DNA of 63,896 nucleotides, filler included, from Platydemus manokwari (Eukaryota): NCBI GenBank assembly GCA_037951405.1. It is 6 parts of 6 records of this genome, joined end to end, with 100 filler letters (N's around TTAATTAATTAA, not from the genome) between each part and the next. Parts side by side here need not be neighbours in the genome. Positions count along the whole stretch, not along the records: positions 55,055 to 63,896 come from JBBMOY011340760.1; 5 more parts are not named here. One strand, given 5' to 3'. Position 1 is the first letter of the stretch; every line of letters begins with the position of its first letter. The translations under genes were made by a program, and so were the position numbers. This document shows positions 55,125 through 63,500 of this stretch, piece by piece. The notes under the pieces are model-generated. The model ran no database searches. It was not told the DNA's origin and saw nothing but the letters and a program-made list of their open reading frames with translations.

Positions 55125-56965
55125 TATATCAGAATTATATTATAGAGATTTGTCTCAGAACACCTTGAAACAGTTTTGTCCTAATATTACAAATGGATTT
55201 ATTAACCATAATCTTTCCAAGAAGTTATAAGTCGTCAATAGGTTTTCATATAGTCATATAGTGTAGCATAAATTCATCAATAGTCACTTTTCATTTTATT
55301 TGGTGTTCATTTGTGTATAAGCAGTAAATATTTACCTAACAAATTTTGGTTATTGATTGATTATGAATAATCAATAGTCTACTTTTGATCATCATCTTAT
55401 TATTGTTGCGTACAAGCATATGGTGCAAGGCTAGATCACTGGATACATAAATGTGAGTCACGAACCCTCAACTGATTGCGTAACATCCTTTCAAATATCA
55501 ATCTAAGTTCTATCAATGTTCTTTCAAAACAAAATGCTAGAACATTGGTATCTTTGTGACACGTGGTTTCTAAAATTCAACACTGATGTTGTAGTACAAA
55601 GTATTGGAACCAAATCATTCAGAATTTGTTTTAAAAATAGCAACAGCTAATTTGCCAGCTCGGTTGAATTAATTACTATTTATTTAAAAGTTTTTAAATT
55701 AGCACTTCATTGTTATAATCTTTCTCTATCCACATTAATCCTTGAAAAATTTTACTGACAGCTATAAGTGTGTTTCTAAAATGAATCAGCTAAGACAAAT
55801 TATATTACCTGGTTTCCATATGTGTCTAGTCTTCATGACAACAAACAACAACAATAAAAATTAAATTCCAAAATCTTAAGACCGTTTATCGCTTTATTTT
55901 AGATCATCTTCATTGTCGGATTGCGGTAAGATGTGTGATTTATGGTTTTATTTAATTGGGTTGTGATCTAACGGTTAAATTATTAGAAGAATAAAATCAT
56001 AAATACATTTCATCACAAATGGTTATTATTTAATAATATATTAAGATGATAATTGTCATACTCTATATATAAAATTCGTTTAAATAAATACTGCTAGAAA
56101 AAATAGTCAAATATGTGTTAAAATAAACGAAATTAAACTACGAAAGTAAAACTTGATCAATATCCTATTGATATAAGTCAATTATTACAAATTATTATAA
56201 ATTAATTAATTAATCATTAAATTCAAAAGTGAGCTATTACGGCTCTATCCTAGTTGAAGATTGCTCATAATCTGAAAAGAATATTTGCAATTTCAAAACC
56301 CAAATATGGAAAATTATTATTTTGTGTAATTGTATTTTATCAAGCTATTTATCAGTGAGTGTAACATTTGAAATACATTCTTATCATTTTGTAAAACTTC
56401 ATGTTATCGCATCTATTTAATTTAAGCTTTTCTACAGCTAAAATAATTGTTAATCCATTATCCATTTTAAAAATATATTTTGGGAAAACTAAATACTATT
56501 TTTTGCGTAATAAAAACCATTTTTCTACGCAAAGAGTGAGCGCTGAGATACCGTCAGGCCCATCGCTAAATTAAAATACAAAAGGTTATGTATTAAACTT
56601 GACAGACTTAAAATGAAATTAACAATAATAGTTAATTTTACGAAACTCCAAATAATTTGAAATGCCAATTCTTAAGATTTAATTTTAAACGGTTAAAAAA
56701 TTTAGTATAAATAACAATTTATAAAAATTAAATATAAATTAATTTTTCTAAAATTTATTTTTAAAAATGTTAAATGCTATAATCTTGTTAGTATTATTAA
56801 TAAAGAGTAGTTGTTATAATCTTTATTTAGTGAAGACATAATTAATATTTATTTGTTTAATTACGTAAAAGGTTCAATTTTTATTTATTAAAAATCAAAT
56901 TTGAAGTTGTAGAAGTGATATTGTTGATTATCACTCGTATTTAAATAAGACCTTTTATATTAAAG

Positions 56966-57915
56966 ATGTCTCATAATACTAATGATTTAGAAAAAAAAAT
57001 GGCTAATATTACAATAGGGTCATTATCAAATTATTTGTCAAACCATGATTACAGCGGCATTTCTCATGTACTGATTCAATCAAGACCCGAACAATTAAAA
57101 GGGAATATCAAAGAAATATTGGTAATATTTTTAAATACTTTACTTTAATGTACTGGCTTTAGATTACAATGAAAACAGATTCGGACATTTATAATATACT
57201 AAGCGCAATAACAGATTCTTTGAAAAGCGATTTAACTAATTGGAAGTCACCTGAGAGTATTAAGTCTATATTCAATGAAATAGAAGATATCTATTATTGC
57301 TTAATATCAGCTGGTAAACCCGATAAGTCAACACATCAGAAATATAATAATATTCTGGAAGAAGTTTTTACAAAATATCTGAATGATGTCGATAAGAAAT
57401 TACAGGAATTCATAACAGAACAGAAAGAAAATACATATATTTACGATTTAAGTGTGATTCTTCTTAATTTTACGCAGCTTTTAGATGTGAAAAATTACGA
57501 GCCTATTCTTTATCCCATGGCTAAATTTGGTGAAACTCTATTCCGCAAGTATAATCAAATCAACAAACTCCAATTGCTTATTGTGGAGTTTATTTTACAT
57601 ATAAACCACCGATTGGTAAATTATCTAGCAGTTGTTCCAGGCAATCCGATTTCAAAGGGTTTGAAAGAATCAATATTCATATATAGTACGATCAGAAACA
57701 ATATTGTCACTTTAAATTACAACCATCCCGAAATTATAACCAAAGCTCTGAGCATTCTCGAACATCGTTCAAGATTTTTCGGATTAACAGCTGACGCCAT
57801 TCCTGAGAACGAGAATCATGGAGATTATATCGTTGTTGATCCATTGAATACAGCTTTTGAAGATGACGATGTATATGATGATTATGAAAGATTCCTGGCG
57901 AATTTGCCAAATTAA
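56966..57915 (+). CDS. PAIP1: Divergent PAIP1-like (MIF4G/HEAT helical) protein, ~302 aa. Exons 56966-57121 and 57163-57915.
   Basis: A 41-nt phase-0 GTAATA...TTTAG intron fuses two ORFs. Helical composition. LSILEHRSRFFG...AIPENE resembles PAIP1 LKLVELRSSNWG...ATPEND, and the acidic tail EDDDVYDDYERFL resembles the PAM1 end (EMDPEIEEAYEKF). The gene model is firm; orthology is tentative. Confidence 0.55.
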
Positions 57916-58443
57916 ACTAATTAATATGTAAACTTTGTTTGGAATTATAAATTACTTCGTTTTGTTCTCTCGATAACTTAGTTCGATTTATTAAATGGTG
58001 GCTTTGTAAAACATTTGTATAGTATTATCGTAACGTTTTTGTATAATATCGCGATAATTTTTTTAATAATACAAATTAAATCCTTATCTAATCTCCAACA
58101 AAATGAACTCAAGTAATACTTTGTCGATATTATAAGATTATTTTGTATGAATCTTGTCTAGTGAAATGTTATTTAATTGTGTGCAAATTTTTCTTCAATT
58201 GATTATTGATTAAATTAAACCAAAATGTTGGCCATTTTGTTTTTGTATGATTTTTAATTTCTAAAATATTGAGACATTTTTTCGATTATGAAATGATGTT
58301 AAATTATTATTTTGAAGTTTTTTTTAAACATAAATACATTTTATTACGGGTAAATGCTTTCGTTTTCAATTTTAAATGTTAATTTGATTTATAAAACTTA
58401 AAAAGACAATAAAGTTGTTAAATTTATTGAAGATTTAAATGGG

Positions 58444-59019
58444 TTATTGTGAAATTGAATCCCTTTCTGCACCCATCAATGCCTTTTCAGCATTTTCATT
58501 CACAATCCTTATGTCAACTGAACTATTAATATGTTTCATCAATGGATATGCTTCTTCATTATCTAATAAATCAAAATCAGTAGAACGAATTTCTTCAATC
58601 TTGTGATACTGGTCTGCATTATCCATCTTATTCAAAATTTCTTGGTCTTCTATTTGAAAAAATCCTCTGATGGTTCTAAGAGCAATTCTATGCTGAGAAT
58701 AATTATTAACCTGAGACAAGTCCTTTAAAAAAGCATCTATCATACGCATTGCAATTTCATGCTTACCATATAACTGATGATAATAAATTTCTGTTAACCA
58801 ATATCCACTAATTTTAAATTTATCTTCTGCAATATCTGACGTAACTAAAGGCCTAGTTCTTATTATACAATTTGCAGTTTTTTCTATGTTGGATAAAACT
58901 ACATCGAATTTTGGATTTAAAAATAAACTGTCTCTAATCAAATGTTGTGGAGTCAAAAACGAATGATAAGTAATCCTTTTATTATATTGTGCATTTGAAA
59001 ACATACCATGAATCAATAA
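58444..59019 (-). CDS. Uncharacterised protein (~186-192 aa) directly downstream of RACK1; start either ATG 59004 or a spliced start at 59019
   Basis: A 195-codon stop-free frame in very AT-rich DNA, with protein-like composition. AAG acceptor-like site at 59022-59020 in phase 0. N-terminal ~30 residues lack acidic residues. No family recognised. Confidence 0.7.
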   Translation of the reverse strand, partial: LLIHGMFSNAQYNKRITYHSFLTPQHLIRDSLFLNPKFDVVLSNIEKTANCIIRTRPLVTSDIAEDKFKISGYWLTEIYYHQLYGKHEIAMRMIDAFLKDLSQVNNYSQHRIALRTIRGFFQIEDQEILNKMDNADQYHKIEEIRSTDFDLLDNEEAYPLMKHINSSVDIRIVNENAEKALMGAERDSISQ

Positions 59020-59064
59020 CTTTAAATTCAAATTTAATAAGAAAATAAAACATAAAATCCAATT

Positions 59065-59070
59065 TTTATT
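59065..59070 (-). promoter_or_regulatory. Candidate RACK1 polyadenylation signal
   Basis: AATAAA 8 nt after the stop codon, followed by a U/GU-rich tract TTTTATGTTTTATTTTCTT. Confidence 0.6.
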
Positions 59071-59078
59071 TAACTAAA

Positions 59079-60066
59079 TTAAGCAAGAGTAACTTGCCAA
59101 ACTCTGATAACATTGTCTGAATAACCGGCAAATAATGTTTGACCATCATGAGACCAGGACAAACAAGTTACTTCAGCGGCAATCTTTGATTTACCATCAA
59201 TAACTTCAGCTTTCAAATCTCCTACGAGGACTTTGTTTTCAAGATCCCAAATCTTGATTGATGAGCCAGTTGCAGCACATAACCAATATCTGTTTGGTGA
59301 GAAAGTAAGAGCATTGATAATGTCACCACCTTCCAAAGTGTACAAATGTCTTCCTTCAGACAAATCCCACAACATGGCTTGACCGTCTTTACCACCACTA
59401 GCACACAATGAACCATCTGGTGACACTGCAACGGTGTTCAAGTAACCATTGTGACCGTAATGGTTGGTTCTCAATTTGCAGTTTGACAAATTCCAAACTT
59501 TGACAACTTTGTCCCAACCGCAGCTAACAATGCTTGGATTTTCAGATGTTGGAGAAAATCTAACACAGCTAACCCAATCAGTGTGACCATCTTCTTGAAT
59601 GGTATATTTGCAAACACCCAAAGTGTTCCACAATTTAATAGTTCCATCTCTTGATCCAGAAACAATTTGACGATTATCAGCGCTGAAAGCAACACTAAGA
59701 ACATCTTTAGTATGTCCAACAAATCGTCTTGTGGTTTGTCCTGAAGTTAAATCCCACAATCTCAAGGTTCCGTCCCATGAACCAGATAAAGCAAATTGAC
59801 CGTCGCTTGACATAACAACATCGCTGACGAATCCGTTGTGTCCTTTCAAAGCTCTTTTGGCATATCCAAAGCTGGTTTCATCACGATTAAGTTCCCAAAT
59901 AATCAAAGATTTATCTAAAATTTAATTAAATACTTTTATAAAGATTATAATTTAAACCTCTTGAAGCAGAGATAAGTGTATTTGGGTAAACTGGATTTGT
60001 TGCTATTTGTGTAATAGGCCCATCATGTCCAGTTAAAGATCCTCTAAGAGTCAATTGTTCAACCAT
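59079..60066 (-). CDS. RACK1: Receptor for activated C kinase 1 (WD40 40S ribosomal protein), 314 aa. Exons 60066-59958 and 59914-59079.
   Basis: [14 protein letters not shown]...SASR|DKSLIIW...[21 protein letters not shown]...[28 protein letters not shown]...[11 protein letters not shown]...[19 protein letters not shown]. One 43-nt phase-1 GT-AG intron (59957-59915). Confidence 0.98.
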
Positions 60067-60419
60067 TCTTTTCAAATTTTATTATTTTTATAAATTTTAT
60101 TAACTAAAACAAATTATCAATTGTTTTTTGTTAGTTTTTATATTTTTATATACATTTTTTCATTTAAATTTAATTTTAAATTTTTTATTTTAAATTTAGG
60201 AATATAAGACTAAAAATAATTTTCAATTAGCATTTTATTTGTTGTGAACACTTTATAAAATCTATTTGATTCTCAAATAAATTTTCAAAGTATTTAAAAT
60301 ATTCTATATTGATATTGAAATTCATCATATTGGTAAGTAATTCAAAATATAGTTATAGTACGGGAATAACATTTCTAAAAGTTAAACCTGCAAATTTTAA
60401 AAAATTCATAAAATTAGAC

Positions 60420-60560
60420 TCATTTAATCAACTTCTATATTGCTCTTGATTAAGGCTACAGGTTTAATCTACTTTATTTTGTCTAAACTTTACCTCGTAC
60501 TTTTGTGTGATGACAATAGGTGTGACAATAGTGATAAATCTTATCTATTAGTCTCAACTA
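60420..60560 (-). repeat. Dispersed repeat family B, inverted partial copy
   Basis: Reverse complement ttgagactaata...tattgtc.tcacacaa...gtagatta..ctgt.gccttaatcaagagca matches 39370-39500. Confidence 0.75.
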
Positions 60561-63500
60561 ATGTATCTTAATTCCTGATTATGCTGACACCAATGAGAAT
60601 GAACAATAATTTATTATTCCTAGTTAAACTAAAACTGTAATTTCCTAAACAAATATTATTGCATCCAGCGGGACTCCTTGATAATTGCTACGAATTTGTA
60701 ATATCAATTAAGAGTTTAATATCAGTAAGGCTTGTGTGTCAACTTTGGCAGTCATTCATAATTCAATCATTTCAGGCCAAAGAGCAGCATCAGTTCCTCT
60801 GTCCAAAAGACCTTTTATTAAATTAGCTAAATATCCAGTAATTCGGTCTTCATACAGTTACTGAAGGCCCTGCGAACCAAAATATTTAACCTCAACTATC
60901 AACCCATAAAATTATTTAATAACGAGATAATATATTACTGGTTTTAATTTGATGAATAAATTTAATATTTATGGAATATAATGGGTTTTGCTTCAATGGG
61001 GTTTCTCAGCTATTATTATTTTATAAATTTACAGATAATAATTATTATAAATACGAATATATTATTTTATAAATACTATTTTAAACTGGTTTCACTAAAG
61101 CGTTCCAAGAAGTGTCACGACATGAAAAACTCTGATTAAATAAAAATTAATACAATAAATTAATTCAATAAATTTAGCCATGTATTGATATCTCAGTAGT
61201 TTCTCTTACATCTCTTGTGTCATTGGAGAATCTCGATGTTTGCTACCATTTGTTGGTATGCTCCAGTTGATTATTGAATTCTAAATATGGATTATAATAT
61301 GGAAAGAATCTGATTGGCTTTTGGCATGTCGCTTGCTGAATTTGTGTGTAACAACCCTTTGAAGGTTATTTCCATAGGTTTCGCAAACAATTGGTTGTTC
61401 TTGTTATCTATCTAAAAAATCTACGTCAAACATTATAGAAAAGATTTTCATAAACGAGATCAGAATAAACCCATCAATGAATGGGGCCAAATGTTGACCT
61501 ATCAAAGAATAGAAAGTATCCGATAAAAGATCTTACAATATTAATCAAAGTAAACAACCAACATAAACATCTATACAAAAGCATCTGTTTTGAAATTTTT
61601 TATTAATATATATATATATGAGTCTTTCTTGTCTTATGTATATGTTTCGAGCATAAAAATGAAATTGCATTTAATGAAAGAGTATGAAAAATCAGCGAAG
61701 ATAAAAAAACTATAAAATATCCGTGTCCTGGGACTTGAAAACTTTAGAGAGGGTATATATTGGGTACTATCAACGCACTATTAATTATAAATAATCATAC
61801 ATAAAATTGTATTAGCTACCAATTAGTCATACAAAATAGCAGCGTAATCTAAAAATACTACTAGTTTCACTTGACAAATTTTGATTCCGAATTACCTCCT
61901 GAGACTCAAAGAAATTTATCCCATGAATTTCTTATTAAAAAATTTGATATAGATAACATTTATGATGAACAATCTTTTAATATTTTACATTAATAATTTC
62001 CCTGCTTAGTTCAGTCAAACCAATAATTAATCTTTAACTAAACCGAAAACTGATAATTTGTTACGTGATTGCTAGAATTTTAGGTCCAATCATTTAGGCA
62101 TAAAAGTGAACCCTATTATAGTAATTGATTGAATTATTCTGTGAGCTTTTTGATAACAATTATGTTTTAATATTAATATTCCAGATTTTCTCATCGTTTT
62201 TATTTATATTTAAACCGTTATAATTAATAATAGCAACTGTAGCTATCGGAGTCAGATTATTATTCAAATATAGCCATTTTTATTTGAACAACTGATATTA
62301 GATCGTGACAACTCACTAAATTCCACACAAATGCATTTATTGGTGTTTTGGAAACATAAATTAATTTAATTGATCCATTGCATGAACTTTTAATGGACAC
62401 TTAAATCATTTTTATTTTGATAATTTTTTATCTTGTATAAATTTTGAATTTGTATACTTTTTCAACAACGAACCGGAATTAATTTATTTTTATTCTTTTA
62501 CTTTTTTATCGTATTCAATTCAAGTCACCATCAAAATGATACAGTTTTAAAAAAATATCATGAATAATAAATAATATAATTTTGCCATTTAAAATATAGT
62601 TAAGTAAGTAGATAATAATTAAGGAAAATCTTAAGCCTAATAAATATAATTATTTATATGTATTTAGATAAGTTTAATAAATACTAATATAAAAATAAAT
62701 AATAGTTGATATCAAATTAAATGATAAAATGTTTTCTGTAAAAATCAATATTAGAATTCTTGACAACCGTACTGAAAATTTTAAAATTTTTAAAAATGGT
62801 AATACGAATTAAGAAATAATCGATTAGTTGTCATCATTAATAGATTTTAGATTTATCTGCGATATTGGATGAGAAGAATCTTAAAATCGATTCATCACAA
62901 AATCAGAAATCATGAATAATCAATCTGAAAATCCAAATGTATCATTACATATCATTGATTTAATATAAATACATTTCTATTCGGTAATCGATGCAAGCCT
63001 AATGATGCCATTAAAATTGAATCTTTGAAAATAAATGCAATCGCTGAACAAGACGAATTCAGAAACAACGAATTTCAAAAGTTAATTTCGAAACATTGAA
63101 GAACTGTTTGATAGTATATATTTTGTTGAGTTTGTTTGGAAAATCGATAATTTTGTAGAGAAAAGATAGTAACCAATGAATTAAATTAACAAAATGATCT
63201 TTAGCAACCCCAACCATTTGTTACTTTTTTTTTTTTATCAATTCACATAATATTTCTTCTATCTTTAACGTATTAAAATTTTCAAACTGATGAAAACACA
63301 TTTATAATTGAGAATATGATATTATATTGCCTCAAATCAATTCACTGACCTCTAATCTGTTTTAGAAAGAGTAATTTTTCATATCTAGAGCTTTTTAAAA
63401 TCATATCAAGCTCTACTTTCATAAGGATTTAAATCAAAGGCAGCTGCTTTATCTCCAGTATTTTCCTTTTTATATTTTATAAATTTATAAGTGCATTTTC

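What the first reader, a model, noticed from the sequence alone, without database searches (positions are those of the whole stretch)
58444..60066. Candidate RACK1 operon: orphan gene 59 nt downstream, possibly started by a spliced-leader AUG
Seen in sequence: after the RACK1 stop (59079) come AATAAA (59070-65), a U-rich tract, an AAG acceptor-like site (59022-20) and then a 191-codon same-strand frame. Only 59 nt separate the stop from the acceptor, leaving little room for a promoter. The first AUG after the acceptor is out of frame and soon hits a stop; the in-frame ATG (59004) comes second. The acceptor is in phase 0, and AAG acceptors are used by two other introns in this window. Established: polyA site + U-rich spacer + trans-splice AG is the layout of nematode operons. 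Flatworms trans-splice, have close-spaced gene pairs (Schistosoma UbCRBP-enolase), and their SL ends in an AUG that can initiate translation. Inference: a dicistronic pre-mRNA couples an unknown protein to the RACK1 promoter. An SL-donated Met would give MLLIHGMFSNAQYNKRITYHSF..., an acid-free N-terminus resembling a mitochondrial targeting peptide.
Basis: partly seen in the sequence, partly recalled or inferred. Interest (0 to 1): 0.82.

Follow-up and report, generated by a model that had tools for sequence, protein, structure and literature searches.

The report
Orphan gene packed behind RACK1
A small, conserved gene of unknown function starts only about 50 bases after the end of the RACK1 message. 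This could be an operon, but no RNA data exist, and the proposed spliced-leader start codon is not supported.

Summary
RACK1 lies on the minus strand (60066-59079, one 43-nt intron). Next come AATAAA (59070-65), a U-rich tract, one AAG (59022-20), and an open frame ending at 58444.

The frame is a real gene. A 186-aa homologue in a related genome is 75% identical, with dN 0.18 and saturated synonymous change. A third relative is 45% identical. No known family or fold matches.

Poly(A)-tailed RACK1 transcripts of 96%-identical relatives end at a conserved TTGGATTAT. That places the window's RACK1 poly(A) site near 59053, about 48 nt before the ORF's ATG (59004). So the tight packing is genuine.

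The specific model is weak:
- An AAG occurs by chance in 52% of 48-nt non-coding windows here.
- The AAG is deleted in the closest relative, which has no AG for 67 nt upstream of its ATG.
- All four cis acceptors seen in this clade are YAG.
- The ORF's own ATG is conserved, so no spliced-leader Met is needed.
- RACK1 and the ORF are not tightly linked in the relative, yet about 45 nt directly upstream of the ORF are conserved there.

No RNA run exists for this organism, and its taxon is unresolved. I favour an autonomous small gene (about 0.5) over an operon (about 0.3).

The parts
59958..60066 (-). RACK1 exon 1 (ATG 60066-60064; 36 codons plus 1 nt)
   Evidence: Read. The spliced product is 314 aa and 96% identical to the transcript-derived P0002.
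59915..59957 (-). RACK1 intron, 43 nt, GTTTAA...TTTTAG, phase 1
   Evidence: The same intron position occurs in the relative's genomic contig L007. The intron is absent from transcript L002, which aligns across it.
59079..59914 (-). RACK1 exon 2, including stop codon 59081-59079
   Evidence: Pfam WD40 E 1e-57. 517-521 bits to vertebrate RACK1 chains in the PDB. 78-79% identity to vertebrate, coral and Capsaspora RACK1.
59065..59070 (-). RACK1 poly(A) signal AATAAA
   Evidence: AATAAA or a one-off variant sits 3-8 nt before the TTGGATTAT motif (10-20 nt before the end of the message) in L002, L007, L008 and L010.
59053..59062 (-). Conserved 3'-end motif TTGGATTTTA; inferred RACK1 cleavage/poly(A) site near 59053
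   Evidence: L002 and L008 carry poly(A) directly after TTGGATTAT. L009 and L010 end there. The L002-window alignment stops at 59053.
59011..59057 (-). About 45-nt block directly upstream of the ORF, conserved with the relative L001 (positions 240-284). It includes the U-rich tract and an out-of-frame upstream ATG (59053).
   Evidence: Local alignment score 33 against 22 +/- 3.3 for shuffles. Only 7-11 of 1000 shuffles reach it; 0-1 of 2000 do when the first codons are included.
59020..59022 (-).
   Evidence: An AAG is expected by chance in 52% of such windows. A 3-nt gap covers it in L001.
58444..59004 (-). Orphan gene CDS, 186 codons plus stop (58446-58444)
   Evidence: Homologues P0001 (75% identity, 186 aa) and P0122 (45% identity, E 3.6e-21). 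dN 0.175 with saturated dS. No Pfam, PDB or Atlas family.
58423..58428 (-). AATAAA of the orphan gene, 16 nt after its stop
   Evidence: CAATAAA is conserved at the same place in L001.

Best explanation
Two separate genes lie head to tail. RACK1 is cleaved and polyadenylated near 59053, giving a 3'UTR of about 27 nt. The downstream gene encodes a 186-aa, mostly helical protein restricted to this lineage, and it is translated from its own conserved ATG at 59004.

I think the small gene most likely has its own short transcription unit. Its start region would be the conserved block of about 45 nt at 59057-59011. Its control sequences would overlap the RACK1 3' end, where RACK1's A/T-rich poly(A) signal region may double as its core promoter. 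Its message would end after its own AATAAA at 58428-58423.

Shown: gene reality, start codon, RACK1 3' end, spacing, and lack of tight linkage in a relative. Inferred: the autonomous transcription start.
For: - The ORF is under purifying selection: dN 0.175, dS saturated, 118 of 183 differences at third positions. It has two relatives among 1.8 billion representatives.
- The Met is invariant at alignment column 1 in all three homologues. In-frame stops lie 9 codons (L001) and 23 codons (window) upstream.
- RACK1 transcripts of 96% relatives end with poly(A) at TTGGATTAT, which aligns to window 59053.
- In the genome behind run SRR33002330, the 290 nt upstream of the ORF (contig L001) have 22-33% GC against 43-52% in its CDS, and they show no RACK1 by tblastn. 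RACK1 itself (L007) has 176 nt downstream without the ORF. So the gene stands alone there.
- Even so, the roughly 45 nt next to its ATG are conserved with the window although synonymous sites are saturated. Whatever drives the gene travels with it, not with RACK1.
- The AAG is at chance level and is not conserved.
- The U-rich tract fits the downstream element of the RACK1 poly(A) site.
- No transcript of this gene family was found in any collection searched, including the soil metatranscriptomes where the clade's RACK1 was assembled at least four times. This is weak evidence against transcription at RACK1's rate.
Against: - No RNA evidence of any kind is available for this organism, so no transcription start has been seen.
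- About 50 nt is very little room for a metazoan-type promoter. The rest of the piece is not compact: more than 3.8 kb without a gene upstream of RACK1, and 530 nt between the convergent stops. The 75-nt stop-to-ATG gap is therefore an outlier, as in operons.
- The gene structure (41-43-nt introns, 27-nt 3'UTR, AT-rich) resembles animal groups that do trans-splice.
- The neighbouring gene has an acceptor-like motif just before its ATG in three species.
- Two out-of-frame ATGs (59053, 59009) would burden a 5'UTR that starts near 59055.
Confidence: 0.5

Rival explanations
1. Operon. RACK1 and the orphan gene are transcribed from the RACK1 promoter as one pre-mRNA. The upstream message is cleaved near 59053. 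The downstream one is capped by spliced-leader trans-splicing at AAG 59020, or at another site. Translation then starts at the gene's own ATG 59004.
For: - The stop-to-ATG gap is 75 nt, with about 32 nt between the inferred poly(A) site and the AAG. The order is AATAAA, U-rich tract, then a single AG.
- The pyrimidine tract is in the top 4% of non-coding windows.
- The rest of the locus is loosely packed.
- Introns of 41-43 nt and very short UTRs are typical of trans-splicing animals such as nematodes, Oikopleura, rotifers and flatworms (established knowledge).
- The neighbour gene shows YAG or AAG directly before its ATG in three species.
- RACK1 itself has ACTAAC plus TTTGTTTTAG 45 nt before its ATG.
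Against: - No spliced leader, SL RNA gene or polycistronic RNA could be looked for, because there is no RNA run. The one apparent 5' leader (L002) is a hairpin artefact.
- The AAG is at chance level (52%) and has A at position -3. All four verified cis acceptors are YAG, and flatworm SL acceptors are UUNYAG.
- The AAG is missing in L001, which has no AG for 67 nt before its ATG. L006 has none for about 76 nt.
- Tight linkage is absent in the relative, although operons are usually hard to break.
- The taxon is unknown, so the presence of SL trans-splicing is an assumption.
Confidence: 0.3
2. One reading: a flatworm-type spliced leader ending in AUG is joined at 59019 and donates the initiator Met. 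This gives a protein with five extra residues (MLLIHG-M...) that acts as a mitochondrial presequence.
For: - The AAG is in phase 0 with the ORF.
- Leaders of parasitic flatworms do end in AUG (PMC12582326).
- The N-terminus has no acidic residue before D25.
Against: - Phase 0 has a one-in-three chance.
- The extension is not conserved: L001 reads differently, lacks the AAG codon, and has an in-frame TGA 9 codons upstream.
- The ATG at 59004 is conserved in all homologues.
- Residues 1-24 are 17 of 24 identical between homologues, and TYHSF persists at 45% overall identity. This is unlike a fast-evolving cleavable presequence.
- The organism was not shown to be a flatworm. RACK1 is equidistant (76-79%) from vertebrates, corals, a brachiopod and Capsaspora.
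Confidence: 0.04
3. The ORF is expressed from RACK1 read-through transcripts without trans-splicing. That would mean a dicistronic mRNA translated by reinitiation or leaky scanning, or an alternative last exon of RACK1.
For: Only the short spacing and the shared strand.
Against: - RACK1 messages of relatives are polyadenylated at the conserved site.
- Two out-of-frame ATGs (59053, 59009) precede the ORF's ATG.
- The ORF is in a different frame from RACK1.
- It is conserved as a stand-alone gene with its own ATG elsewhere.
- Reinitiation after a 314-codon ORF is inefficient in eukaryotes (established knowledge).
Confidence: 0.05

Closest known systems
Nematode operons resolved by SL2-type trans-splicing (C. 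elegans and other nematodes; PMC7668243, PMC1657053 listed)
   Same: Same-strand genes. The order is AAUAAA, cleavage site, U-rich spacer, then the next gene. The upstream gene is a highly expressed housekeeping gene.
   Different: Nematode spacers are typically about 100 nt with a UUUUCAG acceptor (established knowledge). Here there are about 32 nt and an AAG. No SL or polycistronic RNA is shown, and the linkage is not conserved in a relative.
Flatworm operons, e.g. cytochrome b-c1 subunit 7 (UbCRBP)-enolase in trematodes (PMC12582326)
   Same: A closely spaced same-strand pair.
   Different: Flatworm SL acceptors fit UUNYAG. The site here is UUAAAG. That operon is conserved across trematodes, whereas this pair is not conserved in the one relative available. 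A flatworm origin is unproven.
Tightly packed tandem genes with overlapping 3' end and promoter, as in compact eukaryotic genomes
   Same: The poly(A) site of one gene lies within tens of nt of the next gene's start, and each gene has its own AATAAA.
   Different: The surrounding locus is not compact, so the packing here is local rather than genome-wide.
RACK1 / Asc1 (WD40 propeller of the small ribosomal subunit)
   Same: The upstream gene is an ordinary full-length RACK1. It has six matched WD40 repeat stretches in Pfam, 78-79% identity to vertebrate RACK1, and 517-521 bits to PDB chains.
   Different: Nothing notable. It has a single intron and a very short 3'UTR.

Membership tests
SL-resolved eukaryotic operon | Same-strand genes separated by a short intercistronic region | tested here: met
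   75 nt from stop to ATG, and about 48 nt from the inferred poly(A) site to the ATG. The adjacency is confirmed by a contig of run X1.
SL-resolved eukaryotic operon | Upstream gene has its own 3'-end formation signal inside the cluster | tested here: met
   AATAAA at 59070-65, plus the conserved TTGGATTAT motif at which relatives' transcripts carry poly(A).
SL-resolved eukaryotic operon | Canonical 3' splice acceptor (pyrimidine tract + YAG) upstream of the downstream ORF | tested here: not met
   The only AG is an AAG preceded by GAATTTA. An AAG is found in 52% of random 48-nt non-coding windows. It is absent in L001.
SL-resolved eukaryotic operon | Downstream mRNA carries a spliced leader; a polycistronic precursor exists | not testable with these tools
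   No RNA run holds this locus. The only apparent leader, on L002, is an inverted copy of its own CDS.
SL-resolved eukaryotic operon | Organism possesses SL RNA genes | not testable with these tools
   Only this 8.8-kb piece is available. Rfam finds no SL RNA in it. The taxon is unresolved.
SL-resolved eukaryotic operon | Linkage conserved in related genomes | tested here: not met
   In the SRR33002330 genome there is no ORF within 176 nt after RACK1 (L007), and no RACK1 or coding-like sequence within 290 nt before the ORF (L001). Looser linkage cannot be excluded on such short contigs.
RACK1 | Seven-bladed WD40 propeller, about 315 aa, high identity to RACK1 orthologues | tested here: met
Mitochondrial presequence (for the ORF N-terminus) | Acid-free, basic or hydroxylated N-terminus that is poorly conserved and cleavable | tested here: inconclusive
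   There is no acidic residue before D25. However, 17 of 24 residues are identical to the 75% homologue, and TYHSF is kept at 45% overall identity. No targeting predictor is on hand.
Any described protein family (for the ORF) | Significant match to Pfam, PDB sequences or Atlas clusters | tested here: not met
   The best Pfam match is E 0.013, below cut-off. The best PDB profile match is E 0.042. The best Atlas score is 0.87 to unnamed clusters. The AlphaFold model has pLDDT 38.6, too poor for a fold search.

The most novel reading that the evidence does not exclude
The pair is a young operon. In this lineage a stand-alone orphan gene came to lie against the RACK1 poly(A) site and kept only about 50 nt of its own upstream region. 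It is now expressed from the very strong RACK1 promoter through spliced-leader trans-splicing at a non-canonical AAG only about 32 nt after the cleavage site. That would be a snapshot of operon birth next to a relative that still has the unlinked state.
Probability: 0.2. Interest if true: 0.55.

Novelty: new member of a known kind. Interest (0 to 1): 0.3.

Why it matters
If the pair is co-transcribed, it would be a recently formed operon with an unlinked state preserved in a related species. That would help in studying how operons arise in trans-splicing animals. If it is not, it shows that a functional transcription unit can start within about 50 nt of a strong gene's poly(A) site in a genome that is not otherwise compact. 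Either way, the downstream frame should be annotated as a real protein-coding gene starting at 59004. It belongs to a small, uncharacterised, lineage-restricted family.

Tried and rejected
- RNA evidence: the run search found only one DNA-type run, X1. Laying it confirmed contiguity only.
- Spliced leader from a relative's transcript: the 19-nt 5' end of L002 was scanned through JGI contigs. It matched L002 itself twice, the second time as an inverted copy of its own CDS, plus eight unrelated internal sites. It is therefore a cDNA hairpin artefact, not a leader.
- More loci of the ORF family in JGI metagenomes: none found.
- Function of the ORF: Pfam, a PDB profile search, the ESM Atlas and AlphaFold2 (pLDDT 38.6) gave nothing usable, so no fold search was run. 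P0123 (1282 aa, 8 short stretches) is a repeat-protein chance match.
- 'Decayed RACK1 upstream of the ORF in L001': rejected. Local alignments are no better than shuffles, and there are no tblastn hits.
- Homology of the window's intergenic region to the region downstream of RACK1 in L007: inconclusive, with p about 0.03 under one scoring scheme and 0.2 under another.
- Taxon: a RACK1 search, a tree and PDB scores show a metazoan- or holozoan-type RACK1 on a long branch with only unnamed environmental relatives. A paper search for the run accessions gave nothing.
- L003 (ENA contig, P0003) reads as a mammalian, possibly human, RACK1 transcript. After the first look it was set aside and not compared, saved or searched further.
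- Rfam on the piece: only one sub-threshold chance hit.

Full report
**Anatomy**

On the minus strand, RACK1 runs from ATG 60066 to the stop at 59081-59079. It has one 43-nt phase-1 intron (59957-59915, GTTTAA...TTTTAG). The product has 314 aa and matches Pfam WD40 at E 1e-57. It scores 517-521 bits against vertebrate RACK1 chains in the PDB. It is 78-79% identical to vertebrate, coral and Capsaspora RACK1.

After the stop come, in order:
- AATAAA at 59070-65
- TTGGATTTTA at 59062-53
- a T-rich stretch
- a single AAG at 59022-20
- an out-of-frame ATG at 59009
- the in-frame ATG at 59004, which opens a 186-codon frame ending at 58446-58444
- a second AATAAA at 58428-23

A 4193-nt contig from DNA run X1 covers 56900-60532 with one mismatch, so the adjacency is real.

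**Is the downstream frame a gene?**

Yes. The word-indexed search found one 186-aa homologue, P0001, at 75% identity. The exhaustive HMMER search added P0122, at 45% identity over residues 8-126 with E 3.6e-21. A third hit was a repeat-protein chance match.

Between the window and P0001's contig L001, 118 of 183 nucleotide differences are at third positions. dN is 0.175 and synonymous sites are saturated. GC3 differs strongly, at 21% against 62%. That is strong purifying selection on the protein.

The family has no Pfam, PDB-sequence or Atlas match. AlphaFold2 gives only a low-confidence helical model with pLDDT 38.6. Function is unknown. It is a small, lineage-restricted, probably all-helical protein.

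**Where does RACK1's message end?**

Four transcript contigs from forest-soil metatranscriptomes encode RACK1 that is about 96% identical to the window's (L002, L008, L009, L010). L002 and L008 carry a poly(A) run directly after TTGGATTAT. L009 and L010 stop there. L002 aligns to the window from 60084 to 59053 at 81% and no further. The genomic RACK1 of another relative (L007) has the same motif after AATAAA.

So RACK1's 3'UTR in the window is about 27 nt, and cleavage falls near 59053. That is about 48 nt before the ORF's ATG. This rules out 'the ORF lies inside a long RACK1 3'UTR' for the main isoform.

**The proposed acceptor and spliced-leader Met**

The AAG is the only AG in the 48-nt gap, but this carries no weight. 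On this strand, 87.5% of 48-nt non-coding windows have an AG and 52% have an AAG. The four cis acceptors I could verify in this clade are TTTTAG, TTTCAG, CTTTAG and AATAG, all YAG. Spliced-leader acceptors of parasitic flatworms fit UUNYAG (PMC12582326).

In L001 a 3-nt gap removes the AAG, and no AG occurs for 67 nt upstream of the ATG. In L006 none occurs for about 76 nt.

The Met at 59004 is the aligned first residue in all three homologues. The five residues that an SL-borne AUG would add are not conserved, and L001 has an in-frame TGA nine codons upstream. An SL-donated initiator is therefore unnecessary and unsupported.

The pyrimidine richness before the AAG is in the top 4% of windows. 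However, it sits exactly where a U-rich downstream element of the RACK1 poly(A) site is expected.

**Linkage in relatives**

Run SRR33002330 is genomic, since L007 keeps the RACK1 intron. It yields three separate short contigs:
- L007, RACK1 with 176 nt downstream
- L001, the ORF with 290 nt upstream
- L020, the convergent neighbour gene

L007's downstream sequence lacks the ORF. L001's upstream sequence has no RACK1 by tblastn or blastn. Its GC is 22-33% against 43-52% in the CDS, so it is not coding. L006 likewise shows no RACK1 in its 265 nt upstream. Tight RACK1-ORF linkage is thus specific to the window's lineage, or was lost elsewhere.

Despite saturated synonymous divergence, about 45 nt immediately upstream of the ATG are conserved between the window (59057-59011) and L001. 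The local score is 33 against 22 +/- 3.3 for shuffles. Only 7-11 of 1000 shuffles reach it, and 0-1 of 2000 do when the first codons are included.

This block begins exactly at the RACK1 cleavage motif in the window. The simplest reading is that it is the gene's own 5'UTR and start region and that it moves with the gene. A conserved out-of-frame upstream ATG (59053 in the window, 251 in L001) with in-frame indels hints at a small upstream ORF. Two sequences cannot establish that.

**What still favours an operon**

- The 75-nt gap is an outlier in a locus that is otherwise loose.
- The gene architecture (41-43-nt introns, 27-nt 3'UTR, AATAAA signals, 27% GC) is of the kind seen in animals that trans-splice.
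- The convergent neighbour gene has an acceptor-like motif directly before its ATG in three species, and in the window it is an AAG.
- RACK1 has ACTAAC plus TTTGTTTTAG 45 nt before its ATG.

None of this is RNA evidence. The only apparent 5' leader, on L002, proved to be an inverted copy of its own coding sequence. No RNA run for the organism is indexed.

The taxon could not be fixed. RACK1 sits on a long branch with unnamed environmental sequences. The flatworm premise is therefore untested.

**Verdict**

The downstream frame is a bona fide gene that should be annotated from 59004. The RACK1 poly(A) site lies only about 48 nt upstream of it.

| Reading | Probability |
|---|---|
| Autonomous small gene whose start region abuts the RACK1 3' end | about 0.5 |
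| Operon resolved by trans-splicing | about 0.3 |

The arrangement belongs to known kinds, and the interest is modest until RNA data exist.

**Handling note**

Contig L003 (P0003) looked mammalian, possibly human.

Noticed in passing
window 56966-57121 and 57163-57915 (+ strand): A convergent two-exon gene of about 302 aa with a 41-nt intron and no Pfam family. It has only three relatives, at 66-69% identity (P0127-P0129). It is a second lineage-restricted gene in the same cluster.
   Followed up: partly
window 56950-56965; L020 20-37; L021 66-85: All three orthologues of the neighbour gene have a 3'-splice-site-like motif just before the ATG: ...tattaaag|ATG, ...tttccacag|aaaaATG and ...cattttcag|ttttaaaaaaaATG. 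This could be a 5'UTR intron or a trans-splice acceptor. In the window it is an AAG.
   Followed up: partly
window 59053-59062 and about 57937-57960; L002, L007-L010, L020, L021: A recurrent 3'-end motif, TTGGA(A)TTAT. It marks the RACK1 poly(A) site in every relative. A similar TTTGGAATTATAAATTA is conserved 25-120 nt after the stop of the neighbour gene in three species. It may be a clade-specific cleavage-site element.
   Followed up: no
window 60104-60160 (minus strand, upstream of RACK1): A TATA-like run (tatataaaaatataaaa) is followed by ACTAAC and TTTGTTTTAG 45 nt before the RACK1 ATG. It is acceptor-like, with no obvious donor in between.
   Followed up: no
window 60462-60872: Contig depth in run X1 rises from about 13 to 46-113, and the contigs break up here. 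This suggests a repeated element upstream of RACK1.
   Followed up: no
L002 1-26: The 5' end of this metatranscriptome contig is the reverse complement of its own positions about 228-253. It is a cDNA hairpin artefact that mimics a non-genomic leader.
   Followed up: yes
window 59053-58982; L001 251-364: An upstream ATG out of frame with the ORF is conserved in both species, and both indels between it and the main ATG are multiples of three. It may be a regulatory upstream ORF overlapping the start codon.
   Followed up: partly
L003: An ENA contig returned for P0003 reads as a mammalian, possibly human, RACK1 transcript. It was set aside and not analysed.
   Followed up: no
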